Shown piece by piece: positions 12,541 through 61,556 of a stretch of 64,000 nt of DNA (position 1 is the first letter of the stretch; the number at the start of each line of letters is the position of its first letter). Made by a program: the position numbers and the translations under genes. The notes under the pieces are model-generated. The model was given only the letters and a program-made list of their open reading frames with translations, was not told the DNA's origin and ran no database searches. Location of the stretch: NCBI GenBank assembly GCA_964304625.1, contig OZ199838.1, positions 2,904,471 to 2,968,470 on the forward strand, given 5' to 3'. The DNA is from Kudoa neothunni (Eukaryota; Animalia; Cnidaria).

Positions 12541-14898
12541 ATGACCTTTCCACTGAGAATTCGACTTCTTTCATGTTCTCTATTGGTGAGATTAATTACC
12601 CGTCTATTGAATAATAATAACTTATAAATATTTCATATAACTTGGTTTGTACTTTTAGCAACATCGGTCTAATAGTTTCAATTCTTTCTATTCAAATAAA
12701 AGGAATCTTTCGATTCATGAATATCAAAGTTTTGGTCTACTGAAGGAGTTTAATATTAATGTGCCGCGAGGGAAAGTTTGTTTCAGTAAAGAAGAAGTGG
12801 ACAATTATGCTAACAGCCTTGGTAATGCTATATTTTTAACATCAACAATAATCACTGTTGGAACAGTTCATAATGGTGTGAAAGATATGGTTGTGAAAGC
12901 TCAAGTGTTGACAGGTGGCAGAGGTAGGGGTCACTTTAACAACGGTTATCAATCTGGAGTTCATATCACTCACTCGTAACCTATTGTTTGAATAGTCACA
13001 AAAATAAATTTCATTTGATAGAGTGGATAATGCAAGCGAAGTGGCTGCACAAATGATTGGACATAATTTAATCACCAAGCAAACCACCGCGAAAGGAATT
13101 CCTTGCAACAAGGTGAGTTGGAGTTGGTTGATTGTTGTGTTTAATTGACTCTCCCAATAGGTGTTTGTATGTGAGAGGTTATATTCAAGAAGAGAGTTTT
13201 ATGTGGCAATTATGTTGGATCGTGTTTTTGCTGTAATCCAACCTAAATTGAACTAGATTGAGTATTGTAACACGATGACATTTTAGGGGCCCGTTCTTAT
13301 CGGAAGCTCACATGGAGGTATGAATATTGAAGATGTGGCGAAAAACGATCCTTCAGCCATCCACCAACAACCCCCTCAATGTGTTTAAAGGTATATCACA
13401 AATATATGATTTGTGATGGTGTGGATTGAGTTTTTCTATTCTGATAATAACAAACAAATTGTTAGGTTTGAGTAAAGAGGAAGCGCGAGATTTTTTAAAA
13501 AAACTTTCTTTCACCGACGACTGCTTGGATGAGGGTGTGGATCAACTGCTTAAATTATATAGATTATTCGTCGAAAAAGATTGCACAATGGTGGAAATAA
13601 ACCCCTTCTGTGAGACCAGCGATGGAGGAGGTTTTTGTACGCGTTTGTTATCATTTAGAACATTTGTTTAGTTTATTGCCTTGACTGTAAACTTCAATTT
13701 GATCCTAACGCTTTGTTTCGACATCCCGATCTACTGCAATACACTGACAACACTCAGATTGATCCTCGTGAGGTTGATGCCACCAAAAACAACCTCAACT
13801 ATGTGGGTTTGGATGGCAATATAGGTTGTCTTGGTAATTTTTCAAAATTTTTCCTTTTTTTAAGTCAATTTACAATCTTAGTGAATGGTGCTGGTCTTGC
13901 CATGTCCACTATGGATATAATTCATTTGAACGGGGGTAGCCCGGCTAATTTTTTAGACGTTGGTGGAGGTGCAACTGTGAAACAGGTGTTCGAGGCTTTT
14001 AGAATCATCACAGGAGATCCCAACGTATTTCCTAGATAGCGCCAATAGGGAAAAGTTATAGATTTTTATTCGGTTGTTGTTTTTAGGTTAGAGCTATTTT
14101 GGTTAATATATTTGGTGGTATTATGAGGTGTGATGTGATTGCGGAAGGCATTATTGAAGCAGCTAAGAATCTCTCTATAAAAGTTCCTATTGTTGTACGC
14201 CTTCAAGGTTGATTTAAATTTTTTACGTTGTTAAAATTTGAAGTTTATTCATTAAAATAAACAAAAGTTTTTATTATATGGATAAAGCTCATTTGAATGG
14301 ATTTTTAGGAACAAAAATGGATGAGGCTAAAGCTCTGATTGGCAATTCGGGGTTACGCATAATGTCAGTAGATGATCTCGATAGTGCTTCAAAATTGGTA
14401 GTTTTTAATTTACTTTAAATGAAAAATAAATGAGAACACGTGACATTTAACTATTTCTAAAAGGATGCTCATGCTTAATAATTTTGTACTGCCTTTGTTT
14501 TTGAATTTTCTATTTATCCAATATTCTAATAGTATTTGCATAATATTAAAAATGCCGCAAATTTGTTAGATTTTATTCATATTCTATTGTTACCATGGTA
14601 ATAAAATAAATTAAGCTTAAATTTGAATACCTTAATTACATTACATTACGTTATATTATATATTGTATTGTATTGTATTATATATATTATATATTATAGA
14701 ATAAGTAATATAATATAATTAACAAATGAATTTGAACTGACACATGCATGTGCACATTTAATTATTCTTTGATGCAATATCTTCATTTAATTTCAAAATG
14801 GCCGTCATAACGTATTTTATTAGGTTTGCAAGTTGGCTCATATTGTCGAAATAGCAAAGGAAGCAAAGTTGAACATTAATTTTGAATTGCCTATTTGA
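12541..14898 (+). CDS. SUCLA2: Succinyl-CoA ligase ADP-forming beta subunit, mitochondrial, multi-exon
   Basis: Presequence ending [10 protein letters not shown]; [13 protein letters not shown]; GGMNIEDVA; VEINP; [14 protein letters not shown]; [10 protein letters not shown]; [10 protein letters not shown]; SUCLA2-type C-terminus [22 protein letters not shown]. Confidence 0.93.
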
Positions 14899-14952
14899 AT
14901 GTTGTCGTCATTTTGATTTTTGTCCGTTGATGCGCGCGCTTGCCACTTATTC

Positions 14953-15863
14953 ATGAAAGATAGAGCTAGACGTAAAAATGCAGGGCGCAATATGAAAGCG
15001 CTTTTAGCGAGAGATATCGGAGATGCAGCTGATGATGACTTTTACAAAAATATATATGGTGGTTTTGATGAAAAGAGCGATGATAAGGAGTTCAAATCTG
15101 CTGACGAATCATCTACCGATCATTTCGACTCAGACTTTGATCGGAGTGAGTCTGATATCGATGAAGCTAAGGTAATAGAGGAAGAAAAAGAGTCTAGAAA
15201 GCCAATTAAAAAACCAAAGAAACAACAAAAATCCTCAACTTATGGTTATCCTTATACCTCCAAGTCAAACAACACCAACAAAAAGGTATTTAGATTTTTG
15301 ATGAATTTTTTTATTTGATTCAATTTTAGGAAATAGATCTGGAAAGTTTCAACTCTGATTTGGCTCAAATTACATCATCTTCAAACAAAAAATCCAAAAA
15401 ACAATCAAAACCACCTATTCGAACTATGACTCAAGAGCAACTACTAAGAGAAGCGAAAAAAACTGAAAAGCTTAATTTGGAATCACTTCAAAATGCGGTT
15501 AGCATTGATCTCTCCAACAAATCCAATAAACCTAAAAGAATTCTCCACTCTAGAGTTGTACAGATAAAATCTCCTGCGGTGCGTTATTGCTCAAAAATTG
15601 TGATGGATGAGGATGGTCCCTGCAATAATCTTCGATCAAGAACTTCAAACACACTCAGCTTCCAAAACTCTAATTCTGTCAATGGTTCTGTAAAAAGTCA
15701 TTCTGACAGTTATTTTAAACAACAAATGCCAACTACTCGACATCAAATTTGCGAAATTTCCTCCAAAAAAGCTAGATATCGTGATCCTGTCACCGGATCG
15801 TATTTTCACGACGCCAGCTGTTTTAGAAAACTTCGTACTCTTTGGGCACGAGTCGATAATTAA
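14953..15863 (+). CDS. VPS72: VPS72/YL1 H2A.Z chaperone; 2 exons, intron 15286-15329
   Basis: RARRKNAGRNM..LL; YGGFDEKSDDKEF; DHFDSDFD; MTQEQLLREAKKTEKLNLESL; YL1_C motif CEISSKKARYRDPVTGSYF. Confidence 0.93.
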
Positions 15864-16199: not shown

Positions 16200-17867
16200 T
16201 CTTTAAACTCCCAGACTCTTATTAATACCATTCCAAGACTACTAAGCCATCGTACATTTATGTGGTACAAAACATCAGTGAAATCTGACTCCACTTCTTC
16301 AAAAAAATTCTGGAACTCTCGGTGATTCAGCCCCATTCGACCTTATCATATTTACTGCATTTGTGACAGGAACAATGACATTCCTGATGTCCAGTTTAAA
16401 TTTGAAAAGACTTTCTTGGTGATTTATACAGTGGAACGAAAGTAATTCGTGCTTTGGAAAGATTTATTGGATCCTGTCCCACGTTAGTTTGACAAGCCCG
16501 CGATGAGTTCCAATTAATGCAGGTGCTCCGTCAGTTGTAATACTCACGATTTTATCAACACAACTGTGATCTCTCCATGCAATTCATCACACTCTCATAG
16601 AAGTCCAGTCCAGTTGTAGTGTCTCTGAGGCTTTCTATCAAAAAGAGCTCTTCTGTAATTAGAAAATTTTTATCGATACCAAGAATAAAAATGAGCAACT
16701 GTGCAGTATCATTCAAGTCTGTGCTCTCATCTAACGCTATCGAGAACCATTTGAAAGAAGATGCAATATTCAATAGCTTTTCTTTTAGGTTAGTAACGAT
16801 CACATCAACTCTACGAACAAAGGTTCTCCTTGACAATGAAATAACTTCAATGTTGGTTTCACTTCTGGGCAAACTATGTTCCCGACATCTATCATACAAG
16901 ACTTAATAAATTCCGCGCTAGAAAATGGTTTGTTATGTTTTACGATCTATGTGCCAATACGAAACTTGCCTTTGTTACATCCGCATTTATAGATTCTGAC
17001 TTTAAAAACGCATCTTGTTGTTTTAATTTATTCTCCATGTCCACTATCTTCCTTCTGTGTTCAATTACTATAAGGTTTTTTACCGAAATTTTGGTGATGA
17101 GATTGGAAGTGACTTTTCAAGTTATACTACTTGAATACCGCACAAGTATCATGATAAATCAAACATGTGACTTTGGTCCTAACATCAACAAAAAAATACT
17201 TTTCTGTCCAATCAGTGTTAAAAACACGGCATTCATAATCAATCTTTCGTTTTGACACGCTTATTATGGTTAAACTGGATTTCGATGTATTTTTAGTCCT
17301 GATTATAGAATTTGTAGGCTCAGTGGTCATTACAGTCTATTAAATGTATTTTACATATTATTATAAACGTACTCTGTTCAAAATTCGATTTTTTTTGTGA
17401 TGGTGAGTCTCCTTCTTTAATTCTTTAAAGGTTTCTTATGGGTTATGAAGCTGAGTTTCGGCTTAGCGGAGCTTAATTGTTAACAGTAATGATTTTTGAA
17501 CCTACTTTATATTTATTAACCTGTGATCAAGTTTAAAAGTTCTCTTTCGGTAAACTTTTTACCTTAAATTATGTTTCGATTGCAAACATTACATTGAATT
17601 TAAAAAGCGCTTCACAGGTCATTGAACGGTCATTATCGCGTTTTAGTGGAGAATCACACTCATGTTAAAATATACGTCTATGTTTTATTTATCATAGACG
17701 TATTAAAATAAATTAATACGGATGCATGTTGTATATACCTTCATTAACATTAGTCTCGCACTTAAATAATATCCTAGTTGTATTGTTTAATAATCAAATC
17801 AGAAATTCGCATATTTCTTCATTCAACTTGATCAAATTATACTCGGGCCGTAACGTGCCCATTCCTG
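16200..17867 (-). mobile_element. hAT (Buster/GTF2IRD2-like) transposon remnant, 3'-truncated
   Basis: KRKIDYECRVFNTDWTEKYFF, CLIYHDTCAVFK*YNL, FSIALDESTDLNDTAQL, ITTDGAPAL, FHCINHQESL. 5' TIR CAGGAATGGGCACGTTACGGCCC at 17867. Confidence 0.88.
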
Positions 17868-30320: not shown

Positions 30321-33300
30321 TGTTATATCCCTAGAGATTAAGCAATAAACATAATTTACCGCTCACTTTGAGAGATTATATATTATATTCTGCTAGTTAT
30401 CGTATTTTGAGTTAACGCGTGCCTCTTTCTTAGCGTAAATTTGCAACTATTTACATTTGGCGACGATGGATAAGAAAATCCGAACATTTAACAGTTCAGA
30501 TGATATTAACTGCTGACTCGAACAGTTACATCACACTTTCCGAGCACACAAGATTCTTGATGATGAAGACCAGAAATCTATCATCCTAAGTAGTGTAAGC
30601 GTTGATGTATTCAAAGATATAAAGGCTAAGGTCTTTCCAAAAAACCTTATTGATATACCACTTGAAGATGTGGTACTCGCCTTAAAAGGATGCTATTCAT
30701 CTACTGTGAATCAAATAGCCCTACGGTGCATGTTTTACAAACGGCTACAGCATGAGCACGAAAGCGCTAGCGAGTATGCACTAGCCCTGAAAAAGCTTAG
30801 CGTGCAATGTGGCTACAAAGACACCCTTGAAGAAAACCTAAGAGATAGGTTCGTCAGTGGCATACTTTGCGAATCCATTAGAATGGAACTCTTAAATATT
30901 ACAGGCCTTACATGGGAAAAGGCCTTAACCTACATTGCACAAAAAGAGGCAGCTGTAAACGCGGCGAAACTAACAAATACGATCACACCACCAGTAAACA
31001 AGATCACAATTCAAAAATGCTACACATGTGGAAAGTCTGGACATCTCCGATCCGAATGCAGATATCGAAACTCCGTCTGCGATTTCTGTCATAAGAAAGG
31101 ACATATATCTGCTGCATGTATGAAAAAGAAATTCAGCCCAAAAAGAAAGAATGTGAATCACCTGAGCAATCCTTCACATGATAATCCAACGACGCGAGAG
31201 GACTATTCTGATAACGAAAATCCTGATGAGATGGTTCTTAATATACAATCGAATGCTCATTCTCCACCTATTGTGTTACTGGTCTACCTTGATAATATCC
31301 CTGTCAAATTTGAATTAGACACGGGATCTGGTAAAACGATCCTTCCATTAAATGTCTACGAACGCCATTTCCAATCCAATACGTTGTCGAAGTCGAACAT
31401 AATCTTAACAGATTACAATGGAAATAGACTTCGAACTGCTGGGACTGCTACCTTCCTAATGAGGTTTAAGAATAAAACTGCAAATGTCAATGTTATTGTA
31501 GTTGATACACCCAACAACGCATTACTTGGAAGGGATGTTATCTCCATATTTGGCATTGATATACATAAATGTTTCCTAGTCAAACCCAACAATTACGTTG
31601 ATACATATCCCGCAGTCTTTAAAAATACTACAACTAAACCAATTAAGGGATTCAAAACATCCTTAAGTGTTCATCCGAATGCAACACCTGTGTTTTCAAG
31701 AGCTAGAAGAGTACCGTACGCTCTGGAGAAAAAAGTATCTGATGAATTAGATAAGCTTGAGAAGACTGGTATCCTTCAAAAAGTAGAAAGTGCTGAATGG
31801 GCATCACCAACAGTCAACGTGCTAAAAAAGGATGGCTCGGTACGGATATGCGGAGACTACAAGCTTAGTATCAATTTGGCGCTAAATGCGGAGATATATC
31901 CCCTCCCCACACCTGAAGATCTTTTCAACTGCGTGAAAAATGGCGTTATCTTCAGTAAACTGGACCTTTCTCTGGCGTATTTACAACTGGAGGTGCATGA
32001 GGATTATCGAAAATACCTCACTATTAATACCCATAAAGGCCTCTATCAGTATACCAGACTAAATTATGGTATAAATGTTGCACCTGCAATATTTCAGAAG
32101 TTAATGGATCAGATTCTGATTGGAATAGAAGGAGTCGTCTGCTATATCGATGACATAATTGTTTCTGGTGTAACCAAAGAGGAACATGATAGGAAATTGC
32201 ATGAAGTTTTGAAGAGACTTGAAAAACATAACGTCAAAGCTAACGCAACAAAATGTGAATTTGGAGTTTCTGAAGTATCTTACCTGGGACATCTTATTAC
32301 TCCTGAAGGAATAAAACCGATGCTTGATAAAACTAAGGCCATTACTGAATGTCCATCACCTGCTAACGTAGGCGAGTTGAGATCATGGTTGGGATTGATA
32401 AACTACTACAGTAAATTTATTAGCAATTTGTCTACGCCGTTGTATCCCTTGAATCAACTACTTAAGAAAAATTCAACATTTATTTGGACGCTGCAATGCG
32501 AAAATGCGTTTCTTAACACCAAAAAGGCACTACTTTCTAGCAAATGTTTGACATATTATGATGTAGCTTTACCTATTTGCATCAGTTGCGATGCGTCAGG
32601 ATACGGCATTGGCGCCGTCCTTTCTCATACTCTAAAAGATGGCTCTGAGAAACCCATAATGTTTGCTTCGAAATCCTTGAATAATGCTGAAAAAAATTAC
32701 AGCCAACTTAAAAAAGAAGCTCTTTCAGTTGTATTCGCAGTGAAGAAATTTCATCGTTATGTGTATGGACGGAAATTCACTATACTTACTGACAATAATC
32801 CAGTATCGATATTGCTTAAACGAAATACGGGAATTCCTTCCAGTTCTACATCTAGACTTCAAAGATGGAGTATATTTTTATCAAATTATGACTACCAACT
32901 GACCTTTCGCTCTGGAAAAAACAATGCCAACGCTGATGCACTCTCTAGACTTCCATTGGCTAATAATCCCGAATTCAAAATTGAATCTGATTGTTTCCAA
33001 ATCTCCTATTTGACTTCCCTGCCCATATCTGCTGAAACGGTCCAAGCCGAAACTGATAGTGATAATATTTTAAGGCTAGTAAAAAATTCTATTATCAATG
33101 GTTGGTCAAACACTCAAACGGATCCAAAATTGATGCCATACTTCAAACGAAAAGATGAATTAACAATTTCAAATGGTAGTATAATATGTGGAAGCAAAGT
33201 GGTAATCCCAATAAAACTAAGAAAATATATCTTGGATGAGTTACATTGGAGTCATCTCGGTTCACAAAAGTTGAAATCATTGTGTAGAACATATATGTGG

Positions 33301-34393
33301 TGGCCTGAAATGGACAATGACATTCAAAGCATGTGTGATGCCTGTGAGAATTGCAGGAAATATTCGAAATCACCACCAAAAACCTCGTTTTTATCGTGGG
33401 AACTAGCTCTTTCTCCGATGGATAGAATACATATAGATTATGCGGAATTCAAATCATGCTACTTTCTGATAATCGTAGATGCTTATTCGCGATGGCTTGA
33501 AGTTTACAAGGTGAACGATATGACCACCAATACCACAATTCTAAGATTGAATGATTTCTTCAGTAGGTTTGGTTTGCCTAAACTAATAGTAAGTGATAAC
33601 GGTCCCCAATTCATTAGTCACACATTTCGTGACTTTTGCAAATGTTACCAAATTAAGCATAAGACGATTCCACCCTATCATCCGCAATCGAATGGCATGG
33701 CGGAGAGATATGTACAAACGTTAAAACAATTTCTGCAACCGACATAACCAAGTTTCTATTTTGGTATCGAAATACTCCTCATTCCATCACAAATGAAACA
33801 CCAGCTAAAAGATTTTTAAAACGTCCACCAAGGTTCATATTTTCGTGTCTAGCCCCAAATGAAAAAGATATTGTTCCAAAGTCCTTTAATAATTTCAGGT
33901 CATTTGCTGATGGAGAAATCGTGAACGTAAAGAATCATTTAACAAATACATTTGAAAGTGCTAGTATAGTGAGACGACTTGGTAGTGTTACATACACTGT
34001 TCAAATTAATGATAAACATAAGACTGTTCATATTGATGATATAATACCATGGAAAAAATGTACAACACACAATCTAGAGCTAAGCCCCGAAATCAGACCA
34101 TCAGCTGAAGATTCTTTCCATACTCCCAATTCATCACCAAATTCGTTAAGTCCTACCTCATTGACTACAGGTCATCAAGAGAATCGAAGACCTACAAGAA
34201 AGAAAATTGTTCCAAAAAAGTACCAGGAATCAATTTCTCAGCAGAGGGGAAGATGTTATATCCCTAGAGATTAAGCAATAAACATAATTAATTTACCGCT
34301 CACTTTGAGGGATTATATATTATATTCTGCTAGTTATCGTATTTTGAGTTAACGCGTGCCTCTTTTCTTAGCGTGAATTTGCAACTATTTACA
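30321..34393 (+). mobile_element. Ty3/gypsy LTR retrotransposon, Mag-like, 4073 bp
   Basis: LTRs 30321-30455 and 34254-34393 (TG...CA); 5-bp TSD GTTAT; PBS TGGCGACGA at 30458 (tRNA-Ser type); PPT AGAGGGGAAGA at 34243-53. Confidence 0.97.
30466..34274 (+). pseudogene. Single gag-pol polyprotein with a stop at 30514-16 and a frameshift near 33735
   Basis: Two CCHC knuckles; protease LDTGS; RT YIDD; RNase H CDAS; integrase HHCC, SDNGPQF and QSNGMAER. The frame resumes at 33741 with FLFWYRNTPH. Confidence 0.93.
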
Positions 34394-34541: not shown

Positions 34542-36061
34542 ATGTCCCGTGAACAACGCAATATTTCAGAGAAAATGGAAATCATCCATTACTACAATTC
34601 AATAAAAACGTTGAAGGGTGCGAAATCAATGACAATTTCCAAGTTTAAATTGAGTGCTATAGTAGTCTTCTATTGAATAGTATTGTAAAATCACATTTAA
34701 GGTCATTCAACACTTGATAGAATTCTTTCGCACGAAGATGAATTCAAAAATATAGACGATGAAGTGTATGATTGGTTTGTTAAACAACGGTCGAATGGTA
34801 ACGTTCTGTCAGGAGATGCCATTATCAAAAAGGCTTCTTATATTGCAAATGAAAACAAAGTTTCCAATTTTAAAACCAACAAGGGATTGCTTGCAGGGTT
34901 CAAGTCAAGATATGGGATAGTTTTCAAAAAGTTCCATGGCGAGGCTGCGAGTGCAGATGTTGCATCTGTCGACTCATGGATTATTGAGAACATTGATTTG
35001 ATCAGAGCATATAATCCAAAAGACGTTATTAACATCGACGAAACTTCTCTTTATTATGAGCAGTTACAAAATAGTAGTTACGTTTTAAGGGAGGAAGTAG
35101 GGATTAAGGGAAAAAAATTATCCAAAAAAGGGTGACTGTTTTACTGTCCTCAGCTTTAAATGGGGATAAGTTCCCATTAGTTGTTATCGGGAAATTTCAA
35201 AATCCTAGATGTTTTAAGAGTCAAGCACCTCCCATGTGAATATTATGCACAAAAAAGTGCATGGATGACTTCTAGGATATTTATAGAAATAATGAAAAAG
35301 TTTAACCGAAGGATGATAAATCAGAATAGAAAAGTCTTAATTTTGTTGGACCAATGTCCAGGCCATCCAAAAAATATTGATTGCTTTGAAAATATCAAAT
35401 TTTTGTTCTTACCTAAAAATACAACTAGTATTTTACAACCCCTTGATTTAGGCATCATTCGCTGTCTTAAAAGCAGGTACAAAAGTTCAATGACCGAGCG
35501 AATGGTTTTATGCGAAGATTCTATCATAAAAAAATGTACATTGCTCGACCCAATGATAACATTAACTAAATGTTGGGGCAGTATTCCGCCGCAAATTATT
35601 ATTAATTGCTTTAAAAAATCAAAAATATTTGGGGGTATTAAATAAAATTACGACGAGAAAGTTATTCTCAGTTTATAGACCAAGAAGATGTGAGTGAGAT
35701 ACCTCAAATCAGCAACTGTTCTCAAGGTAATATTTAATGTATACGTAATTAATTTTTTCTAGATGAAATCGAAGATTCAGAAAATATGTTTGATGACGAT
35801 TATGAAGCAACATGTGAGGAAGAAAATAATGAGGACTCATTGTCCATAAGTGACGAATCTGACGATAGCGAATCAATCATTGAAGACATCAAAATTTCAA
35901 TTAATCGAATGAAAAATGCAGTGAACGTTCTGAGGGAAGCTTTTATTAAAGAGGATCTGACGGGATTGTTTGATTTACATCCCATAATGGACCGAGTTTT
36001 AAAAATATCAAGAGAAAGATTCCGACAAACTAAAATTACAAGCTTTTTCGACAAAATTTGA
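34542..36061 (+). pseudogene. Tigger transposase, frameshifted; introns 35635-35678 and 35727-35762
   Basis: CENP-B-type HTH (YDWFVKQR...FKSRYGI), NIDETSL, LLDQCPGH, LQPLD, acidic tail ending QTKITSFF. Confidence 0.9.
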
Positions 36062-36499: not shown

Positions 36500-39400
36500 T
36501 TTGTCGACTCCGCGTGTTTGTAGAATTAAGCATACATTCTCTCCCAAATTCGTACAATTGTTGATAAAAACCGTAATTTTAATGATGATTGTTCTCAAAA
36601 ATATTTCTTCACCCATTCAATGAATAAAACGGTGTGTTTGCTTTGTCTCGAATCAGCCGCCGTATTAATCCTCTTACACACATCGGGGGTCAAAAATGGG
36701 CCCAGCCTCTTTTATCAACGATTTTCTTAAAATCTCTCCTACAGAGTTTTCAGTAATTTTTCCTAATTTATGTTATTATTTTATTAATTTAAAATATTTT
36801 CTGAAATAAAAATAAAATGAATTATAAACACTATTAAATCATCGAAACATTAAAACTTCCATTCCCCATTCTTTATTGGAAATCTATGATAATTACTCTC
36901 TTAATTCCATGTGTAATATCAAATAAAACCATTAAATATTCATTTAATTTTAAGAATAAGTAAAATAATTTTGAAGAAGAGATAAATCGATGAGTTTTTA
37001 ATGTGTCACGTGATCATATAGATTCAAAATCACCTGAACTTTGGTCTGTTTTAGAGATGGAAAGAGATAAACATGGAATTCTACTGGATGGCACTGATTT
37101 TGAGTTTAGCGACTATTCGATTAAACAATCCTATATCCGATTATGATGATTCGGATGATGAAACAGAATTTAGCACTGAATTGATTGCCACGTTGACTTT
37201 GAAAAATGGAGAAAAGTGGTCTAAACAACCAACAACAAGCCAACGAAGAACTGACGTGGAAAATATTTTTAAGTGCCGATCAAGTTTCAAATCGCATGTG
37301 CTAAAACGATCGGATACCCCATTCATGGCATTTTTAAACTATTTCTTCAACGAAATCCTTGATTTGATTGTTGAATGCACCAATAATTATATTAAAAACC
37401 ATATATCAAAATTAACTATGATTATCAAAGATTATCTATTGAAATATATTGTTGGCTGCATAATGATTGGTTTAATGAAGGATAAAAATATGGATATTCG
37501 AGAATTCTGGTCAACCTACAATAAATCAGTCAATCTCCATTAATTTATTTGAAAAAATATTTTCGTGTATTCGGTTTGATAAAAGAGAATCCAGAATACA
37601 AGATGACAAATTGGTTCCCATAGGGAAAGTTTTTGAGCACTTTATTGGAAATTTTCGAAAAAATTATACATCCAATGAACAAATGACCGTTGATGAGCAA
37701 CTGGTGACATTTAGAGGGAGATGTGGGCCCAAAATGTACATTCCAAATAAACCCGGACGGTATGGTGTTAAAATATGGGCTTTATGCGACTCAAAGATTG
37801 CCTACCTATTCAAGGCAAAGGTATATTTTGGAGAAGATAATGGCGAAGTACAGTTTAATCAAGGGGAAAATGTTGTGAAAACTTTATGTGAGTCGATTTT
37901 TAAATCTGGTCGAAATATCACAACAGATAATTTTTTCACTACTCTTTCCCTCGCAAGATTTCTACTTGGCCAAAAATTGATAATTGTAAGAACTATTCGA
38001 AGAAATAAAAAATTTTTGATAGATACCAGAGTTTCAAATGTCGAAAGGAAATGAAAATAATAGTCAGTTCTTGTTGTCAACACTTTACAGAGATGCGAAT
38101 ATTGATGAAGAAAGTCCAAAATCTGAAACTATATCCTACTATAATTCTACAAAAGGTGGAGTTGACACTCTTGATCAAGTAGTAAGATATTTTTCGGTAG
38201 AAAGAAAAACACGAAGGTGGCCAATGGCTCTTTTCTATAATTTGTTAGACATTGCTTCGTATAATGCCTACTTGTTGTATTGCGAAAAGCATCCCGCATT
38301 CTTGAATAAATATAGAAGGCGAGTTAGAAGAGAATTTCTAGAATTACTCGCATACGAGCTTTTACCATCTAAAAGTCCCGAAACTGGCATTCTATCTTTA
38401 AGAAGACCTAAAATCTTACAAAACAATATCAGAAAGTGGTGCCAAATCTGTATTTGTTCGAGGAGATTGAAAACGTCGTCGCAGTGCAAATTATGCAATA
38501 AAATGGCGTGCCAACTTCATAATAAAGAAGAAATAATTTGCATTAAATGTTTGAATTAAAATAATATCAATTAGAATTTTTGAAATTTTAAAAACGTTTT
38601 CATGTGTTTATTTTTTAGTGGGGGTCAACCTAAGTTTTTTTGCGCATGTGTACGAGGGTTAAAGGAATATAACTTGGAACAAAACGTGGGGAATCCAGTG
38701 AAAAAATCAACAATAACAACAGGGAACATACGACCTTAAAATACCTTGAAAGTTACCAGAAGAAACTCAGTTGATTAAAAACGAAATCTCTAACCCCAGA
38801 AGACCAATCTGAAGCAAGTTTTATGATATCATATATCATATAACATTGCTCGGCGAAACAAACCATTTTTAAATGGCGAATTTATAAAAGAATGTATAAT
38901 GGATTGTGTTAACGTTGTTTGGCTGGAATTGAAAAAAAAGTTTGAAAATATTCCGGTATGAAGGAAGACAATTGTGTGTCTTATAGAAATGATAAGTGAA
39001 AATTTAAGCCAATAATTAAAAGATACAAGCAAAGATTTGGTGCGTTATTCATTAGCTTTAGATGAATGCATCGATATTAAAGACACTGCATAATTGCTTA
39101 TCTTTGTACGCGAAATAGACCCTAATTGTTGTATCACTGAAGAGTTACTTTCTTTGGAACAACCGATGGAAAGTACAACGACTGGGCGGGATTTGTTTGA
39201 ATGTGTGGTTAAAGCAGTTGAAAACAATGAATTACCTCTGAGTAAATTTACAAGCTTAACAACTGATGGCACTCGCTCTTTATTGGGCAAGAATTTGGGA
39301 ATGATTTAACTATTGAATGGAAAGCTTAAAAGGGAATCTCCTTTTTAATCTTTTCTGTCGTTTCACTGCATTTTAAATCAAGAAAGTTTGTGTAAATCTG

Positions 39401-51233: not shown

Positions 51234-52155
51234 TTAAGGGGCCACAAACTCTAAGGTTAAATTCCTTATTTTATGATTTCCAAGCAGAATATTAGCATAT
51301 TCAAGGTTGTTGTGGGTATCACGGTAAGCTAAGTGATGATCCTTGTACATCCAATCTAAATTTTTTTATTCATATGGTTAAAATTATTAATATTTTAATT
51401 GAGAATTAAGTTTAATAAATTTACAAACAGGAATTAATTACTTGTTCTAAAGATCCTCTGGAAGTCGGTACATTGTTCGTCAATATAACATAGCTCATTT
51501 GAATAATTAAGTATTTGTCTTCTCATCTAATTTTCAATATTATACGAAAGCGGTTTTAGATGGGAAAATAAATTATTATTACCTCTTGAGTAATTACAAA
51601 CTTATTATTAGCAAGTTCAAGGCGATAAATGAAAAGAATCAGCTATCCTGCAGTTAATTACATTACAAACAATTTTTCATACAATACAAGGTAAGCAAGT
51701 GACTTTTTCCTTAAAATAGATGACTAAATTGATAAATGGATTCATTAACCTACTGACTACTAAGAATTTACTGTCGTTATCATTGCAACTGGCGAAATAT
51801 TTACAAATTTCGTCAGGTTGTGGGTACATATTGACAAAGGCGTTCACCTTGGGTGTTACTTTTCGAATTATGCTTCTCTACATTTATGTTAAAAGAATTA
51901 ATTAATAAAATTACTTTTATTTCACTATATTTAAATAAATTTTTATCATATAACTCCAATAAAGTTGTTATTATTTGTCGAAGAGGTGCGCCTTGCATTG
52001 TGAACTGAAATTAGTTATTTACATATTCATTTTTTGGACTAACAATTCTCACGGGGCTTCCTAACGTGATTTCAAAATTGAGCAAATCTAAATATATATT
52101 TTAAAATGAAATTTCACTTATAGTTACGAAACGAAAGCAGAAAAAATGTTAACAT
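51234..52155 (-). CDS. Secreted saposin-like (permuted) protein, copy A, 8 exons, about 180 aa, intact
   Basis: Spliced: MLTFFLLSFHLLNFEITLGSP-FTMQGAPLRQIITTLLELY...YPQPDEICKYFASCNDND-IIYFKEKVTCLPCI-LILFIYRLELANNK...ILNYSNELCYIDEQC...LEFVAP*. Exon phases shared with copies B and C. Confidence 0.75.
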
Positions 52156-53360
52156 TGATCCCAATATTAATTAAAAAATTGTAGATATTATCTAAAAATA
52201 TTCCGCTCATATCTTCTTATGATTTCTATAATTTCTATGGATACACAACCGCTGATAATCTAAAATTGAAATTTCTTAGGAAGCATAAAAAGAAATGATT
52301 ACGTTATCTGTATTTTCTTATTTATAACAGATAAAAATACAAGTACTTTATATAGTGGGTCTCTTAATTGAACTCGGCATTTTTTTCATTCAATTAAAAG
52401 TTTATGTAAAATATTAAAAATTCTTTTATGAAGCATTGGTTTATTTTTAGTTAAACATAAATAAATCTAAATTGAAAACAGTTAATTTATGGTTTAAGCG
52501 CAATTCTTAAAAATTTATTTGTCTGTTCCTCACTTTATCTACATTCAAATCTGAACAGATAATTATCTAAAAATAGATGGTTTATCTATAAATAATTAGT
52601 TTTTAACAAAATATTAATACTGAAAACTTTCATTGTGGTTCTAATGCGAAAATGCATGTAATGCATTGATTTTCTACTTTCCAATTTTTTCGTTGCATCC
52701 ATACACAACTCTATATATATATGTATATATAATTAATTCGTCCTCTGTTTATAATTCATATTTCAGAAAAAATTCGTATAGTATTATCATAATTTAATAA
52801 AATTGGGTGATTAAATGGCAATACTCCTGGCGTAATGAAATGTATTATTTTAAATTATAAATTCGTGATGCGGCAAATTTTCATTAATATTTACTTTTGG
52901 GTGTATATTGCGTTGTAAAAATGGTAGAAAGATCTCGTACTTAAAATTTCCGTTTATTATAGTGTAAACTATAAAAATTAAGTCTTTGGAAAAGGTGGTT
53001 TTAAACTTTGTTACATGTAGCATCATTACAAAATAAATTATATTAATTTCTTTTTATTTTCCATTAAATTATCACTTAACTGTTTTAATATTTTTTACCA
53101 AGAATGAATTGAAGTTAATATTTCATATTGATTAGACCCAAATAAAAACATTAGGGGTTGTATTAAATGGGTTTTGAGGATTATATGTAAAATTGCAAAA
53201 TAATGAAATAAAATATTAAATATAAAATAACCATATAATATAAAAACGTCTCTATTTAAAATAGCCTAATAATAGAAGAAATGATTATAAATGCATTGAA
53301 AAAATAAATATACACATTTTGATATTATTAAAACATTTTTCTAGACTAAGTGCGAATATT

Positions 53361-54296
53361 TTAGGTTGATTCCATCTTTAACGCAATATTTGTTATTTTA
53401 AGATCTTTAAAAAGAATTATGACTTCTTCAAGGCCGTAACGATTTTGATAGCCGTAAGATACATGATTCATCAATTTTATTTCTAAAATTTACAATTATA
53501 TATATATATATATTATCACGACGATATTATTTTGTTATAAACGTCATGATAACTACTTGAATTAAATGGTCGCTGAGAATCGTTGCATTTTTCAATCAGA
53601 TAACACAAGTCGTTTGCGTAATTAAGAAATTCTTGTAGCATCTATAGTTTAAATCAAACGTGAATTTATAACGATCAGAATAAAATTTTTGGAACATTAA
53701 ATATTTGAGGAACTCAACGAAATCAAAGAGATTACTTCGCCAGTAACGTCAAATGTTTTTGCCAGGCCAAGTCGATAAATATAAAGAACCAGCTATACCG
53801 TAATCAGAAAAAATAAACAAATTAAGCATACAACACAAGGTAAACAAGAATAATCTTCCCTAAAAATAAGAACTAAATCAAGAAAAATTTACTTAGCGTT
53901 GGTATACAAAAACTACTTGTTGTGCCGTCGCAAATGGCAAATATTTTACAAATTTCATCTTGATCGGGGTAAATACTCAAAAAATATTCTATATTATGTG
54001 TAGCTTTTGCAATAATACTTGTCTATAAAAGTTTTAGTGGTTGGCCTTTAAAATATACTTTCGTGTAGCTGTATTTGAATAAGACGCTACAATTCAGATC
54101 CACTAAAGCTTTCATTATTTGATAAAGGGGAAGACTTGATATTGTAAACTATAATAAATCATTAAAATATACTAATAATTTATTAGTAAATTTTACGAGT
54201 GTTGGTGTTGTGATTTTAATGTTTAAACAATCTAAAAAGGATTAAAAATAATCAGCGTCACAACTTACAAAGAAACACCACACATAACACCAGCAT
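53361..54296 (-). pseudogene. Saposin-like family copy B, frameshifts in exons 2 and 7
   Basis: Same exon layout (YPDQDEICKIFAIC, SCLPCV, FLNYANDLC). Exon 2 is 33 nt versus 35 nt; TGT ATC TGA in exon 7. Confidence 0.7.
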
Positions 54297-55083
54297 TCGA
54301 ATTATTTGAGTTTATTAGGAAGATATTACCTCAATATTTTTAAATTAATTTATCATTATAAGTTATCTTTGATATCTAAAATTTTATAATTAATGATTGA
54401 ATATATATATCTCATTCAAACAAAAATTTGTCACATTATCTTATAACTCAAAATTTGATAAGCTAATATAAAAGAATATTTATTTAATTAAACCTATTTT
54501 TTAAGGTAAAATTTTTGTATTCCTTCATGTTTAGCAAATGAGTATACAAAATTAATGAGAATGTACTGACATTCATTCGTTATAAGACTATTTATCTTTA
54601 AGTGATATAGCTTTTTGAAAAATTAATAATCTTTAATCAAACTTTTTGAAATTTCTTAACCTATTTCATTTTTTTTGATAAAATATTTAATAATATTATA
54701 TAGATCTTATCAAATGCCCATATCACCTTGGAGATAATATTGATTAGTACCTTATATCATATTTATTATCATATTTAGTTATTATAATAGTTAACGTAGT
54801 TCACGCTATACCTACGATACTGTAGAAAAGTGTGTAAAATTTTTCACGAACTATATATTTTTTCTGTGTTACTATACAAAAAATATAATTTTTCAATGTT
54901 TCGCATTTGATATTATGGAAATAATACATGTATTTTTTGTAAACGAGATAAGTTATTTTCATGACAAGATATTCAGAATATTTTGTTTATAGTTTCATCA
55001 ATCTAAAAAAATATTTTGAATATCACTCAGTTAATAAAAAACGCAAAAACATGTTAAACAAAAATATTTAATGAGCTAAAAAT

Positions 55084-55287
55084 TGTCATAATCCGAGAAT
55101 CACGATCCCTCACAATAAAGAGGGAAGTCGTTCCCGGGTGGGCGACCCGGTGGAGACCGAGGCAGTGCCCACGCTACACGGAGATATACATAGACACGAC
55201 TAAACTGGGAGGAATACCATCACTACCTTTAGTCTATTTTATTCCAGTTCTCTTTCTTTTGCGCGGCCTTAATCCCAAACTATAACA
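55084..55287. mobile_element. Solo LTR, 204 bp
   Basis: TGTCATA...TATAACA termini, 5-bp TSD AAAAT, GC-rich interior, AATAAA on both strands. Confidence 0.8.
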
Positions 55288-56320
55288 AAAATATTTTTTT
55301 ATAATAAGGGCGTCCATATTGTATTATCATTATTGAAGAATATTTCGCCAGTCGTGGGTTATTTTATAAATGAATTTTCAACGAATTATGCTTAAAGTTT
55401 TTATATAACTTAACTAATAATTCTTTTAACAATTTCAAGAATGTGTTTAATATCACGTCAACGTAATACAGTATGTAACCAATTTCACGCACTTTTTAAA
55501 CCCCCATTTAATAGGAATATTTATTAGTTATTGTTTATATAATATGTTTCTTATAATATTTCAATTAAAAAATTTTTCAATAATTTTAACAAATTCGAAG
55601 TCTTTAATTGTTCACTGATTTTTTTTTATTTGTATCTGTTAGTAATAAGTGTGTAAATGTTCAAGCTTAACTTCGTATTTTTAAAACAGAACTTTCTGAT
55701 TTATTCTATTCAAAATTTTAACGAAGATGTTTAAATTAAACTATGGCATAAATTAATGTGTTTTTTAGTTTATAAATTTTTTCGCATTCATTATTCATGA
55801 TTTAAAATATTTTATAACAATATTTGTTCTAAAATTCCAACATGAAAATTTTTAATTTATTTTATTCAATTATTTATTTATATATATATATATATATGTA
55901 TATAAGTGAATAAAAACAAAAATCTTCAATAATTATTTATTAATTAAAATTAACTTAAAAGTAGAGTAATCGTCATAAATAAAAAAAAAAGTCATAATCC
56001 GTTTATTTGAAAATCGCGCAATCCCAAAAAACCTTGGTTGAAATTTTTGAGTAAAATTACTATGAAATCTGAATTAATGTCTGGTTAAATAGCACCTCCA
56101 TCCATTTTTTGGATTCATAAGTTCGTTATTTATTCAAATTAAGTTTAAGATTGGTTAATAGAAACAACTCAATGTAGATTATTATAGTTCGTGTTCGAAA
56201 GTCAATCATGTGGACAATGGACAGGAAAATTTTGAGTAAAAACAAATTCCCTTACATCTTTTCATGAGTAATAAATACCAAAAATAAAATTTATTGGAAT
56301 GTTTAATCACAAACTAACAA

Positions 56321-57094
56321 TTACTTCATAAAATCAATATATCGATGGAGTTGACCCAATTCAACAATGTTCGTTCACACATCTACTTTTTCTATAACAC
56401 CACCACTATTAAGTCCTATTGAGACGTAACAATCATTAATAAATATTAAATTGTTGGAATAAAGACATTTTTCGGCTCCAGCAGGAAGTGTTCATGAATT
56501 GGCCGGAAATATGAATTTGAATTCCTTATTTACTGGCGATTGGTTTATAGAAGATGTTTTTAAGTTTAAAAATTGCAATAAAAAATTTATTGAATTTTGC
56601 AACGTGTTGAGTTGATTCCAGAAACGAGGGATTGTGGTCAATGTCACCAATTTATGGCATTGAAACAATTTAACATAATGAATGACCGTGTGTTTTGATC
56701 TTATCAATGAAATAAACGGGTTAAAATTAAGAATAGATCCTTTTTTATTACGCCAAATTGTCGTTATGGAGAACACTTTTCATGATGTATTCGAAATTAA
56801 CGGCATATAAATGAAACAAAAAAAATATCGTCGCGAGAAATAATATGATGATGGAAAAACTACATAAGAGAAATTTATAAAGAGTATTTCATTATTCATA
56901 GGCCCTCTATTGATGGTGTTGATGTGATTGAGAAAATAAACGAATCTCATGTTCGTAAACGAAAATTTCACCGTGGGAGTGTCCTCATAAACTAGACTAT
57001 TAGGATCATGGGCGGGATTAATTCTACTGTCAACTTTTTCCATGTCCTTGCTGAGAAACGCATCCAAGCCATCCTTTAAGAAATAATAATTCAA
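56321..57094 (-). pseudogene. Unknown coding sequence, 258 codons in one frame interrupted only by three TGA
   Basis: ORFs 56780-57094 and 56492-56776 are in frame and continue to TAA at 56321. TGA at 56780, 56492 and 56375. Confidence 0.5.
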
Positions 57095-57869
57095 AATATT
57101 AATAGAGATTAACTATGTGGACGTACAAATGACCTTCTTATCATAATTTAACCCACTTATTTAATATTTAATACTAAAGGTTTTACGAAACATAGTATCA
57201 AGTTTAAGAATGTCAAATGTGTGCATATAAATCTAATAGAGGCCATTTAATTTGCAACCAAATGCAAATTCAGATGAATCACCAATACAAAATCGGAATT
57301 TTTGTAAATAATTATTTCAAAAAAATGCCCTGTTAAAATATTTTATCAATTTTCTTTAGAATAATTAATGAAATCCATCCACATTGTCGTATTTTGGGCG
57401 TTTTATTTTAGGCCCGATTTGTCGCGACAGATGCCGAACGATGTACTTTACCGTATTTTAGTCGCATATCTCAATTAAAAAGTAATTTCTAAATATCGTT
57501 AAGGAGAATTCTAGGAAAATACTCCCCATTGTTATTTTAATTATTCTCACTATCATTATTAGTACAACCTACAATATCCATATTGAGAAGAAATTGTAAA
57601 AAATTAATAATAATAATAATAATAGTCTATTTTTTAGAATCTAGGATGTATTATTGAAATATGGCGCGGTGGTGTTAAAATCGTACATCTCTGTTGTATG
57701 CGTGCGCCGACTACGCTGGATCTCTAACTTTTGTACCTTAAACTAATGTTTTCACATTGTATTCACCAGCATAACTTATATATTTATATAGTAGAATATT
57801 CGTTTAAAATATAAAACAAACATTAGATAATGGAAAATAAAGTATACAACCAACCTACCATTTTTTATC

Positions 57870-57971
57870 ATTGCACATGCGCATTCATCAAATTTCGTTG
57901 AACCCGAAATTTCAGTATCCGAAAGAAATATGCCAATCCAAACATTTTCGGATAAACAGGGTTCGACTGTA
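57870..57971 (+). mobile_element. Right end of a Tigger-like element
   Basis: ATGCGCA subterminal motif and ...GGGTTCGACTG|TA, laid out like 36160-36261. Confidence 0.55.
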
Positions 57972-58942
57972 TACGATCTTTAAGCTGTTTATGTTCAATC
58001 AATTATGGATGTTATTACGTGTAAAACATTTTTTTATTATTTATCTCAACGATATAAAAATGATGTAAAACCTAAAAATAAACACTTAGTACCACATTTT
58101 CGCATATAAAAATGAAATTCTACGTCGTATTTTATAATTTTCTTCAATATTTTTGTGTGTTTGAATGTTTCGAGCGTTTTACACTAATATAATTAATTTA
58201 CTGAGATGTATTATCTATCAAAACGTTTACAAAAACTAGTAACAACCACAAAATATTGGAATAATGAAATCCCTATCAAAATCCTAATAATCCTCATATC
58301 AACACAGAATCACCCTCGGTTTTTAAAGGCCTAGTTTTGACGCACTTTTTTCTTCGTCCCGGGGGGATTACGTGAAGTTGGTCCCCTACTGTAGTTTCTT
58401 TGGAGAAAAATAAGAATAAATCCTAATCACGCTCAGTTTGGTAAAATTAATATCAAAATAATATTTTAACAATATTTCACAATATTTAAAGCATGGTTGC
58501 TTTTGGATATTTATAAATAATAGTGTATACAAATAAGTACAAAAAATCGATAACTTTGGACTAAAATATTGGGATCTATTGCAAGTGAGATTTAGGAGAA
58601 TATATGCGGAATGGTCCTTCGGGGTGATTCCCGACTACTTTTAGTTTCACAAATTCTTAATTTTATATTAACTACTATTTTAAATTTAAATCAAATATTG
58701 AAGTCATGAGGTATTTACAATTCAACATAATTTGGTTGTTAATTTTATGTCATTGAAGAAAAAATAGTTTTTTATTAGAGTACAAAGCATTTTATTACCA
58801 TTAGATTCATTTGTAAAATAAAGTACTATAATTATATATATATGTACTTAGTCAATGACACATTTATTTATTTATTCTGAATATAATTTTTTCGAAAACA
58901 TTCACTAAATAATATTAATAGGCATACGTTAACTAAATTGTT

Positions 58943-59883
58943 TTAAAGAGTTTCAAACTTTAAGGTCACATTGGCATTTTTGTGATTTCGTGGAAGGGTA
59001 ACGATTTCTATAAGCTCGTGCGGTTCGCCATTATAATAATATTGATTATCACTAATATATTTTTCTAAAATTATCATTATTGAAAAGTCTAAAAATATTT
59101 TTTGTAATTAATGATTATTTATTTAACCCGTAATGAAATTTTTCGAAAATACCCATACTATGGAGACCATTGAAATCTTCGCAAATTTTGCTTGTGTAAC
59201 ACATATCTTCTGCATATTTGAAAGATTCATCCCTAACCTAGAGTTATAAAAGAGTAATATTAAAAATATATTATATTTAAAAAAATGATATGGCATATAA
59301 AAAATTTAGTAGATTACTTTTTTAGTTATATAAAAATATTTGTCTGCTAATTCAATACGATAACTGTAAAGAACCAACTATTCGAATATCAAACATATTT
59401 ATAAAGTTATTTCATACAACACAAGGCAAACATGTTTGTTTTCTCTTAATAATAAGGACTAAATTTTTTGACAACTGACTAAAGCATTTTTCAAAAGCAG
59501 AAACTACTTTTGTTACCCATGCATATGGCAAATTTTTCACAAATTTGCTCTGGCTTGGGGTACTCATTGAAAAATTTTTCTACATCAGATTTAGCTCGTC
59601 TGATTATTGTTTTCTATAAAATATATATATATATATAATTTTGAAGCGGTTACTTTTATTTCGCTAAATTTGAATAAGTTGTTTCCACATAACTCGCTTA
59701 ATGCATTCATTATTTGAAAACGGGGTGTACCTGATATTTCGAACTATAATTATTTATTTTAAATAACAGAATGTATTATCTCACATGTTTTTGAGATGTG
59801 CTTCGAAAGTTAAAACAATCTAAAACAAGTAAGAATGAAATACATCAAACCTTACATAGTATAACCACAATAAGGTTAAACAT
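58943..59883 (-). CDS. Secreted saposin-like (permuted) protein, copy C, 8 exons, intact
   Basis: MFNLIVVILYCFNFRSTSQKH-FEISGTPRFQIMNALSELC...YPKPEQICEKFAIC...KQTCLPCV-LVLYSYRIELA...YAEDMCYTSKIC...LKFETL*. Confidence 0.75.
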
Positions 59884-60682
59884 TTAATTATTGATGTATT
59901 ATCTATGCGGTTAATTTGCTTAGATATTACAGTTTATATCGTAGTATAATAAGTATCTATGTTTACTAACCAAAAGATAATTGTTAATGGTTAAATCGCA
60001 GAATGAGATTAATATTATTAATAAAAATTGGGTTCAAAACATAAAATAATATCACCAAATGGTTATCTGATAAATATATTTTATTGTAGATACCAATAGA
60101 TAACCTAAATATTTATAGGTAAATATGAATTACAATTTAAACAAGAATCCAATGTTACTCCAAGTATACAAAAGAATCGACGATTCTATTATGTTTTATC
60201 GCAACAACATTATTTTTTTATTCAAAGATAAATGAAGATAATAAAGACGACATTTTAAATTCCAAGCTGATTGAGGTTTTTTAAAGTTTAAAACTACATA
60301 ATTTCATCAATCCTTTAACCCATCGGTTATTAAACATTTTACAGGTTTTGAACCCTTGTTAACGTGTTTCCTCGAAAATAAGACATGATAGCTTTTACTA
60401 TTAAAAATTGATATAACACTGGGTTGTATTTTCAAGGAAAGATTGTATGTATATTATCATATGCGTGTTAGTAAATGAGGGGAAATGGTAACGCCTAATT
60501 TTAGATAATTTTCCCACGACCAGGGATGATTGCCTAAACCCGTTTAATTATTGTATGTATAATTACATAGATTTAGTTACGATTAACTTAAATATCAATA
60601 GAATAATCTTTGTCGAAGCATTTCAATGGAAAATATCAATCTATTTTTGAATTTTCGCTCACTCTCGATCATATTTTCCCTT

Positions 60683-61556
60683 ATTTTATATTTTATCTGT
60701 CAATAATGTTCTATATTGTTATTAATTGTTTATTATTAAATCAAATCAAATGTCGATACCAAGATTCCAAAACGCTTGAAAGGTTAGAAGAGTTTGAGGA
60801 CACCAAATAAATTGTTAAAATAGTTATATTTGTTTTTGCCTAAGGAGGTCTATGTAAATTCACAAGATGTAAACATTTTTAGAAAAACACAGATTACATC
60901 AGTTTTAGAATGCATATACAGTCACCAAATTATTCCTTTACGACAACAATTCTTAATTTCAAATTACGCATTTTATTTAATATCATCATAAGACATTTTA
61001 CTTTGAAGCATCTTTAACCTTTGAATAATGAATCTACATCGTAAATAATTTGGTTACACCACAATCTTTATAAGGGAAATGCAACATCTCCTGAAAACAC
61101 GGCTTTAATAGCTTTATCTGTCTTAAAATCACTCCAAACGACATATATAACATTCTCACGGCATTCTATTGTAGCGGATGAGGATCGAACCTGAGATCCT
61201 CGAGCTGAAAGTGGCGGGGCCTTACCACTTAGACTACGGGCCATAGCGCACTTGAAGTTAGACGCAACTCTATTTATGTGGATGTGCCACAGTATTATAA
61301 GTAAAACCTAAATAACTAATTTTACTAATTATTTTCAAACCTTTATAAAAATACTAGCGTGCCTATCAAACTAAAAATACATTTTCCACAAAAATATTAT
61401 AAACTAAAATTATAATTACTCCAAAAATTTATTTGGTGTCCTCAAACTCTACTAACCTTTCGAGCGTTTTGGAATCTTGGTATCGACATTTGGTTTGATT
61501 TAATAATAAACAATTAATAACAATATAGAACATTATTGACAGATAAAATATAAAAT
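60683..61556. repeat. 131-bp inverted repeat pair (60683-60813 and 61426-61556)
   Basis: The arms are reverse complements with three mismatches by eye. Confidence 0.9.
61170..61243 (-). pseudogene. tRNA-like sequence (Glu-TTC-like pseudogene or SINE head)
   Basis: A box TAGTCTAAGTGGT, loop CTTTCAG, B box GGTTCGATCC. Acceptor and anticodon stems do not pair. Confidence 0.6.

What the first reader, a model, noticed from the sequence alone, without database searches (positions are those of the whole stretch)
51234..59883. Three-copy family of secreted, stand-alone circularly permuted saposins (swaposin-like)
Seen: three minus-strand genes (51234-52155, 53361-54296, 58943-59883), missed by the ORF track, share 8 exons with matching phases, a hydrophobic N-terminus and six conserved Cys in the order P..IC..FA.C - CLPC - LC.....C. 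Known: canonical saposins run CxxC - LC...C - P..IC..L.LC with bonds C1-C6, C2-C5, C3-C4, and the reversed order is the swaposin of plant aspartic proteases. Copy A's LANNK..TQE...ILNYSNELC closely recalls that insert. Inference: there is no CxxC before the first Cys pair and no IC..C after the last, so the order is C5,C6,C1,C2,C3,C4. That implies one permuted fold in a free secreted animal protein with no protease. The copies are strongly diverged and one is disrupted, which fits birth-and-death evolution of a membrane-active or lipid-handling effector family.
Basis: partly seen in the sequence, partly recalled or inferred. Interest (0 to 1): 0.82.

Follow-up and report, generated by a model that had tools for sequence, protein, structure and literature searches.

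The report
Expanded secreted cysteine family of Kudoa
These three genes belong to a previously unannotated family of about 50 small secreted, disulfide-bonded proteins in a tuna-muscle parasite (Kudoa neothunni); they partly resemble a back-to-front saposin (a lipid-binding fold), but that fold is unproven and the cysteine pattern departs from the plant version.

Summary
The three genes are real, but all three are intact: eight GT-AG exons each, near-identical lengths, 187-188 aa, 38-41% identical. The 'disrupted' copy disappears with the intron-4 splice sites shared by all three. The genome matches Kudoa neothunni. The family has about 50 loci (33 in one 430-kb cluster), plus one relative in another sample's metagenome; the scan noted it before on other DNA of this genome. 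Saposin ancestry is plausible but unproven. For: exon 4 looks like a saposin C-terminal half, followed by a CxPC helix; language-model neighbours are SapB_2 clusters (under 0.9). Against: no Pfam or PDB match; the cysteine that opens the plant swaposin is absent; about half the paralogs carry a fourth cysteine pair, lost jointly at least three times; two paralogs lose cysteines in pairs that fit a nested hairpin ladder better than swaposin bonds; about 80 residues of conserved flanks are not saposin-like. Copy A's likeness to the plant insert is not family-wide. No RNA evidence was found. The spliced protein was not searched or folded, so the fold is open.

The parts
51234..52155 (-). Copy A, intact 8-exon gene, 188 aa. 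Exons 52155-52128, 52087-52053, 52004-51915, 51877-51772, 51723-51683, 51642-51583, 51526-51442, 51355-51234
   Evidence: alignment to paralogs
53361..54296 (-). Copy B, intact 8-exon gene, 187 aa. Exons 54296-54269, 54231-54197, 54148-54059, 54022-53917, 53872-53832, 53792-53736, 53641-53557, 53482-53361
58943..59883 (-). Copy C, intact 8-exon gene, 188 aa. Exons 59883-59856, 59819-59785, 59743-59654, 59613-59508, 59458-59418, 59377-59318, 59237-59153, 59064-58943
   Evidence: no internal stop
52053..52155 (-). Exons 1-2 of A: putative signal peptide (hydrophobic first 9-12 residues); no SignalP available
51772..51877 (-). Exon 4 of A: most conserved module, amphipathic helix then F-x-N-x-Y-P and C76-x5-C82; resembles a saposin C-terminal half without its first Cys
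51583..51723 (-). Exons 5-6 of A: C96-x-P-C99 followed by an all-round hydrophobic helix; position 107 is Cys in the 8-Cys paralogs
51442..51526 (-). Exon 7 of A: helix with invariant Ala/Ser129 and C133-x5-C139; position 125 is Cys in the 8-Cys paralogs
51234..51355 (-). Exon 8 of A: variable linker, short helix and an alternating hydrophobic (strand-like) C-terminal motif seen in most paralogs; no TM or GPI-like tail
52156..52260 (-). Upstream region with GATA-type words (AGATAA/TGATAA), a feature enriched upstream of the family
   Evidence: not controlled against other promoters

Best explanation
A, B and C are intact members of a Kudoa-expanded family of about 50 secreted, roughly 19-kDa, disulfide-stapled helical proteins. 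Shown: gene structure, copy number, tandem clusters, a local five-gene clade, purifying selection, a fourth disulfide pair (C107-C125) present in about half the family and lost repeatedly, and some broken paralogs. Inferred: the core derives from the junction of two tandem saposin repeats, so a C-terminal half (helices 3-4, C76/C82) precedes an N-terminal half (helices 1-2, C96/C99/C133), as in swaposin. It was then remodelled: the C3-C4 bond of saposins is gone, C139 and C107/C125 are new, and an extra N-terminal helix plus strand-like termini were added. Inferred function: the proteins are exported, apparently under a shared GATA-type promoter, and bind lipid or membrane surfaces at the host interface through the hydrophobic helix after CxPC, with surfaces diversified between paralogs. 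Lysis is possible but not indicated: charge is mixed (pI 5.7-8.6).
For: Exon-4 hydrophobic columns (54, 55, 62, 65, 66, 75, 79) sit at the offsets from the C-x5-C that I recall for saposins (recall, not tested). A frame holding exons 4-5 has SapB_2 clusters as Atlas feature neighbours, ten of ten named hits in one clan, scores 0.77-0.85 (lead only). C99 to C133 is 27-29 residues in the short subfamily against 28 in StPSI (Cys71-Cys99, PMC7447066). The plant insert also has a hydrophobic patch after its CxxC (PMC5717070). Permutation from tandem repeats is the accepted origin of swaposin (PMC3320104). dN/dS 0.22-0.58. AGATAA upstream of 29/36 genes against 35% background.
Against: No Pfam or PDB match for any exon or exon profile. 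Genome-wide SapB_1, SapB_2 and Saposin scans miss these loci. No Cys at the swaposin Cys6 position. Invariant Ala/Ser at 129, where saposins have a large hydrophobic residue (saposin side from recall). Paired Cys losses in L015 and C3:5150573 fit another bonding. Exon 7 has no saposin neighbour in the Atlas. No expression data.
Confidence: 0.4

Rival explanations
1. Nested-ladder hairpin, not a swaposin. Exons 5-7 fold as an antiparallel two-helix hairpin with bonds C96-C139, C99-C133 and C107-C125 (twin C-x7-C register). C76-C82 closes a local loop in the exon-4 module, which is either a left-over saposin half or a convergent motif. The protein would act as a compact protein-binding effector or variable antigen.
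For: C107 and C125 are both present in 21 loci, both absent in 17 and discordant in 1 (plus reading). They lie 8 residues inside C99 and C133, the register of a hairpin. L015 lacks C96 and C139 together while keeping C76/C82; C3:5150573 lacks C76 and C82 together while keeping CxPC. Small residue 129 would face large residue 103. A bond between the two Cys of a C-x5-C motif was not ruled out even in StPSI (PMC7447066).
Against: Only two informative losses, both in odd paralogs: L015 may be truncated and C3:5150573 gained C80 and lost C107. L013 lacks C76 alone. A C107-C125 bond is also compatible with saposin helices 1-2.
Confidence: 0.33
2. One reading: a free single swaposin with bonds C76-C99, C82-C96, C133-C139 that permeabilises host membranes like amoebapore or the plant insert.
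For: Motif order, linker and spacing as in the best explanation; secretion; expansion in a parasite.
Against: The mature chain is about 168 aa, far longer than one saposin fold, with conserved flanks. The plant C3-C4 equivalent is missing. Net charge varies from -2 to +3. The helix after CxPC has a low hydrophobic moment (0.11-0.21). The paired losses above do not fit these bonds.
Confidence: 0.12
3. An orphan alpha/beta fold unrelated to saposins, serving as a structural or adhesive component of the spore or polar capsule and expressed as one developmental battery.
For: No detectable relative among 1.84 billion representatives except one metagenome fragment; strand-like motifs at the start of exon 3, in the linker (87-90) and at the C-terminus; shared upstream GATA words.
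Against: Median identity of 29% among about 50 paralogs is more typical of interface families than of structural subunits (inference). The SapB_2 feature neighbours are unexplained.
Confidence: 0.15

Closest known systems
Plant-specific insert (swaposin) of plant aspartic proteases, e.g. StPSI
   Same: C-x5-C motif before a CxxC motif; hydrophobic patch after CxxC; 27-29 residues from CxxC to the next shared Cys in one subfamily (28 in StPSI).
   Different: No protease; own signal peptide; no Cys at the Cys6 position; extra C139 and optional C107/C125; 13-residue linker against 30; about 30 and 50 extra residues at the ends; no HMM-level similarity.
Canonical saposin-like proteins (saposins A-D, NK-lysin, amoebapores; Pfam SapB_1/SapB_2)
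   Same: Small, secreted, helical, six or more conserved Cys; exon 4 has SapB_2-like features; parasite expansions of such proteins are known (own knowledge).
   Different: No CxxC at the start of the mature chain; no complete canonical domain; Pfam models do not match.
Junction of two prosaposin repeats
   Same: C-terminal half, short linker, N-terminal half is the sequence seen between tandem SapB domains and the proposed source of swaposin (PMC3320104).
   Different: The outer halves are absent; no prosaposin gene was found in this genome to compare intron positions.
Twin C-xn-C helical hairpins and lineage-specific small cysteine-rich parasite effectors
   Same: Two C-x7-C helices with a co-varying inner pair; tandem expansion, rapid divergence, no homologs.
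   Different: Resemblance from own knowledge only; no family model matched.

Membership tests
Swaposin (plant-specific insert) | C-terminal saposin half precedes N-terminal half (helix order 3-4-1-2) | tested here: inconclusive
   Motif order fits, but homology of either half is supported only by sub-0.9 Atlas hits for exon 4 and none for exon 7
Swaposin (plant-specific insert) | Cys 25 residues before the C-x5-C (StPSI Cys6) that bonds the last Cys (Cys99) | tested here: not met
   Residue 51 is never Cys in 34 exon-3 rows; three paralogs have a Cys at 55 instead; StPSI map from PMC7447066
Swaposin (plant-specific insert) | Six Cys with only one after the CxxC | tested here: not met
   Two Cys (133, 139) after the CxPC in these genes, four in the 8-Cys paralogs
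Swaposin (plant-specific insert) | About 28 residues from CxxC to the next conserved Cys | tested here: inconclusive
   27-29 in the short C3 subfamily, 31 in L047, 33-34 in A/B/C
Swaposin (plant-specific insert) | Inserted in an aspartic protease precursor | tested here: not met
   Stand-alone 187-188 aa genes with ATG, hydrophobic leader and stop
Swaposin (plant-specific insert) | Bonds C5-C2 and C6-C1 (here 76-99 and 82-96) | tested here: inconclusive
   Two paired losses favour 76-82 and 96-139, but both are in odd paralogs
Saposin-like proteins (SapB) | Match to Pfam SapB_1, SapB_2 or Saposin | tested here: not met
   Exon-wise scans at E<=10 blank; genome scans miss the loci. Exons are short, so sensitivity is low
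Saposin-like proteins (SapB) | Canonical order CxxC, C, C, C-x5-C with long helical spacers | tested here: not met
   No CxxC upstream of C76; exons 5-7 of 8-Cys paralogs show the canonical order only with 7-residue spacers
Saposin-like proteins (SapB) | Four- to five-helix saposin fold | not testable with these tools
   Spliced model not submitted; the natural exon4-intron-exon5 frame folded at pLDDT 50, uninformative
Saposin-like proteins (SapB) | Lipid or membrane interaction | not testable with these tools
   Needs bench assay

The most novel reading that the evidence does not exclude
An independent circular permutation of the saposin fold in an animal: a free, secreted swaposin-like core with rewired disulfides and added flanks, expanded to about 50 co-regulated paralogs in a gene-poor fish parasite, present in at least one other species, and acting on host membranes or lipids.
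Probability: 0.35. Interest if true: 0.78.

Novelty: new variant of a known kind. Interest (0 to 1): 0.57.

Why it matters
Kudoa neothunni has only about 5,300 predicted proteins (PMC12239612), so about 50 secreted paralogs are roughly 1% of its genes, and no full-length member is in the protein databases searched. I found no paper linking Myxozoa to such a family. Whatever the fold, it is a strong candidate host-interface family for a parasite of tuna muscle. If the permuted saposin core is confirmed, it would be a second natural origin of the textbook swaposin permutation, outside plants and free of a protease.

Tried and rejected
Alternative intron-4 splice sites that give a stop in C or a phase clash in B: rejected because one 106+41 nt solution fits all copies. 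RNA confirmation: the holders were low-depth contigs with no joints, and the one raw RNA run laid no reads. Pfam and PDB scans by exon and by exon profile: blank or chance. Word search with the exon-4 alignment: blank, but its length window cannot reach 188-aa proteins. Big search: P0001 genuine, P0002 a repeat artefact. Weak SapB hits L003-L006: no convincing saposin gene. Internal duplication (exon 4 vs 7, exon 3 vs 7): hhalign probability under 1%. The buried hydrophobic helix as an argument against saposin: dropped, since StPSI has one too. AlphaFold on a natural read-through frame: pLDDT 50, so no fold search was run. Host of sample SAMEA5316497: not found in the codfish paper I guessed. 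Frizzled-CRD, GFRalpha and chemosensory-protein spacings came to mind from memory; no scan supported them. The joined spliced protein was not searched or folded. Broken paralogs were left as they are.
Full report
Observation. I read the region on the minus strand and listed all splice signals. One model fits all three genes: exons of 28, 35, 90, 106, 41, 60 (57 in B), 85 and 122 nt, phases 1-0-0-1-0-0-1, all GT-AG, introns 36-94 nt, 188/187/188 aa and no internal stop. Start and end coordinates match the finding exactly. Pairwise identity is 38-41% and alignment scores lie 52-58 standard deviations above shuffles.

Organism. The assembly has 40.26 Mb in four contigs, about 30% GC and a (TAAACC)n array at 12.04 Mb of contig 2. 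This matches the Kudoa neothunni assembly from yellowfin tuna: 40.2 Mb, N50 12.0 Mb, GC 30.4%, mean intron 49 bp, one (TAAACC)n chromosome end, and almost no parasite RNA (PMC12239612). An earlier scan note gave the species lead; the check is mine.

Family size. Exon 4 of copy C found 33 places. An 18-row profile found 49 at E<=1e-4, 33 of them on contig 3 between 5.05 and 5.47 Mb; an exon-7 profile found matching downstream exons at 36 places. I held 40 loci. Exons 4 and 5 were 106 and 41 nt in all 36 chains modelled, although other lengths were allowed. A, B and C form a supported clade (96/91) with two genes 21-26 kb beyond the window. Median identity over exons 3-5 is 29%. dN/dS among the five is 0.22-0.58 with dS near saturation: purifying selection, and no evidence for positive selection at this depth. 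Two paralogs are broken (C3:5121387 within exon 4, C3:5059205 at exon 7), and L015 and L017 are irregular. Birth-and-death evolution therefore holds for the family, though not among the three genes here. The scan had already noted this family in other windows; those notes are not independent support.

Relatives elsewhere. Pfam and PDB scans were blank, and so was the length-limited word search. I therefore used the big search with the exon-4 profile. It gave one genuine hit (P0001, E 6e-10) and one repeat artefact. P0001 comes from a 2-kb contig of an ENA metagenome assembly (L047) that carries exons 1-7 with the same plan and the 8-Cys pattern, at most 39% identical to the paralogs I held. 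The family thus probably exists in another myxozoan; the host of that sample could not be confirmed. No annotated full-length member turned up, so none could be folded. As the operators instructed, the joined spliced model was not sent to any search or folding tool; joined translations were used only inside scripts to check frames, count cysteines and build the tree.

Cysteine framework. A, B and C share C76-x5-C82, C96-x-P-C99 and C133-x5-C139. About half the family adds C107 and C125, each 8 residues inside C99 and C133. These two are both present in 21 loci, both absent in 17 and discordant in one (with one shifted row and four more loci read by eye). On a tree built from exons 3-5 only, joint absence appears at three or more places (main 6-Cys group, C3:5143401, L017, weak backbone).

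For a saposin origin. Exon 4 has conserved hydrophobic columns at 54, 55, 62, 65, 66, 75 and 79, the offsets I recall for saposin helices 3-4 (recall, not a test). The Atlas places a natural frame holding exons 4-5 next to SapB_2 clusters, ten of ten named hits in one clan, but at 0.77-0.85, with low recognition and 17 intron-coded residues in the query, so this is a lead. The CxPC is followed by an all-round hydrophobic helix, as in StPSI helix 3 (PMC5717070). C99 to C133 is 27-29 residues in the short subfamily against 28 in StPSI. A C-half, linker and N-half is what a trimmed tandem repeat gives, the accepted origin of swaposin (PMC3320104).

Against the swaposin label. The Cys6 position here (residue 51) is never Cys, and C139 has no counterpart. 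The exon-7 likeness of copy A is not family-wide: 129 is Ala or Ser in all 32 rows, 132 is mostly polar, and exon 7 has no saposin neighbour in the Atlas. L015 lacks C96 and C139 together, and C3:5150573 lacks C76 and C82 together. Both are clean pair losses under a ladder 96-139, 99-133, 107-125 plus 76-82, and neither is under swaposin bonds; but both genes are odd, so the weight is modest. The mature chain is about 168 aa, with an extra helix in exon 3 and strand-like motifs at its start, in the linker and at the C-terminus, none of which belongs to a saposin. An AlphaFold run on the natural exon4-intron-exon5 frame gave two helices at pLDDT 50 and settles nothing.

How it probably works. 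Shown: intact, conserved, leader-bearing genes with no TM or anchor tail, in tandem arrays, with strongly diverged surfaces and mixed charge (pI 5.7-8.6). AGATAA occurs upstream of 29 of 36 genes against 35% of background windows (p 3e-8 before correction; paralogs are not independent and other promoters were not used as control), which suggests co-regulation. Inferred: export, a disulfide-stapled helical core, and binding to lipid or membrane surfaces of the host.

Verdict. A real, undescribed and much larger family than reported, with all three window copies intact. It fails defining features of the plant swaposin and should not be filed as one; it may still derive from, and work like, a saposin. 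Interest 0.57; if the permuted fold is confirmed (about 0.35) it would deserve about 0.78.

Noticed in passing
G000 C1:2,989,006 and 2,994,486 (L009, L016), 21-26 kb beyond the window end: Two more intact-looking 8-exon copies on the same strand; they form a clade with A, B and C.
   Followed up: yes
upstream of family genes, e.g. window 52156-52260, 54300-54400, 59884-59960: GATA-type words (AGATAA, TGATAA) enriched upstream of 29-30 of 36 family genes against 35-39% background.
   Followed up: partly
L047 (ENA ERZ28624939, sample SAMEA5316497), 1267-1978: Eukaryotic, 26% GC contig in a metagenome assembly with exons 1-7 of an 8-Cys family member; probably an unnoticed myxozoan in the sample.
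   Followed up: partly
G000 C3:5130080, 5125546, 5106832: Three paralogs share a ninth Cys at position 55 with no evident partner; B and C have an unpaired Cys at 40/41. Possible inter-chain bonds.
   Followed up: partly
G000 C3:5071369: Paralog with an intron 4 of about 1.2 kb, probably an insertion, with exons 5-7 intact downstream.
   Followed up: partly
G000 C3:5136589: Exon 4 appears to end in a GC donor.
   Followed up: no
window 30670-34274: 1025-aa gag-pol-like ORF of an LTR retrotransposon (protease, RT, RNase H, integrase motifs by eye).
   Followed up: no
window 95-713, 16555-16899, 34764-35645, 37073-38559: Fragments resembling DNA-transposon transposases (Tc1/IS630-like, hAT-like, pogo/Tigger-like, piggyBac-like), by eye.
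   Followed up: no
window 60683-61556: 149-nt inverted repeats, 94% complementary, 576 nt apart: likely a MITE just upstream of copy C.
   Followed up: no
window 13713-14039 and 14920-15863: Exons resembling succinyl-CoA ligase beta subunit and YL1/Vps72, by eye.
   Followed up: no
L003 (G000 C3:5,917,000), minus strand: Open frames of over 100 aa that look like fibronectin type III repeats; the weak SapB_2 hit there is chance.
   Followed up: no
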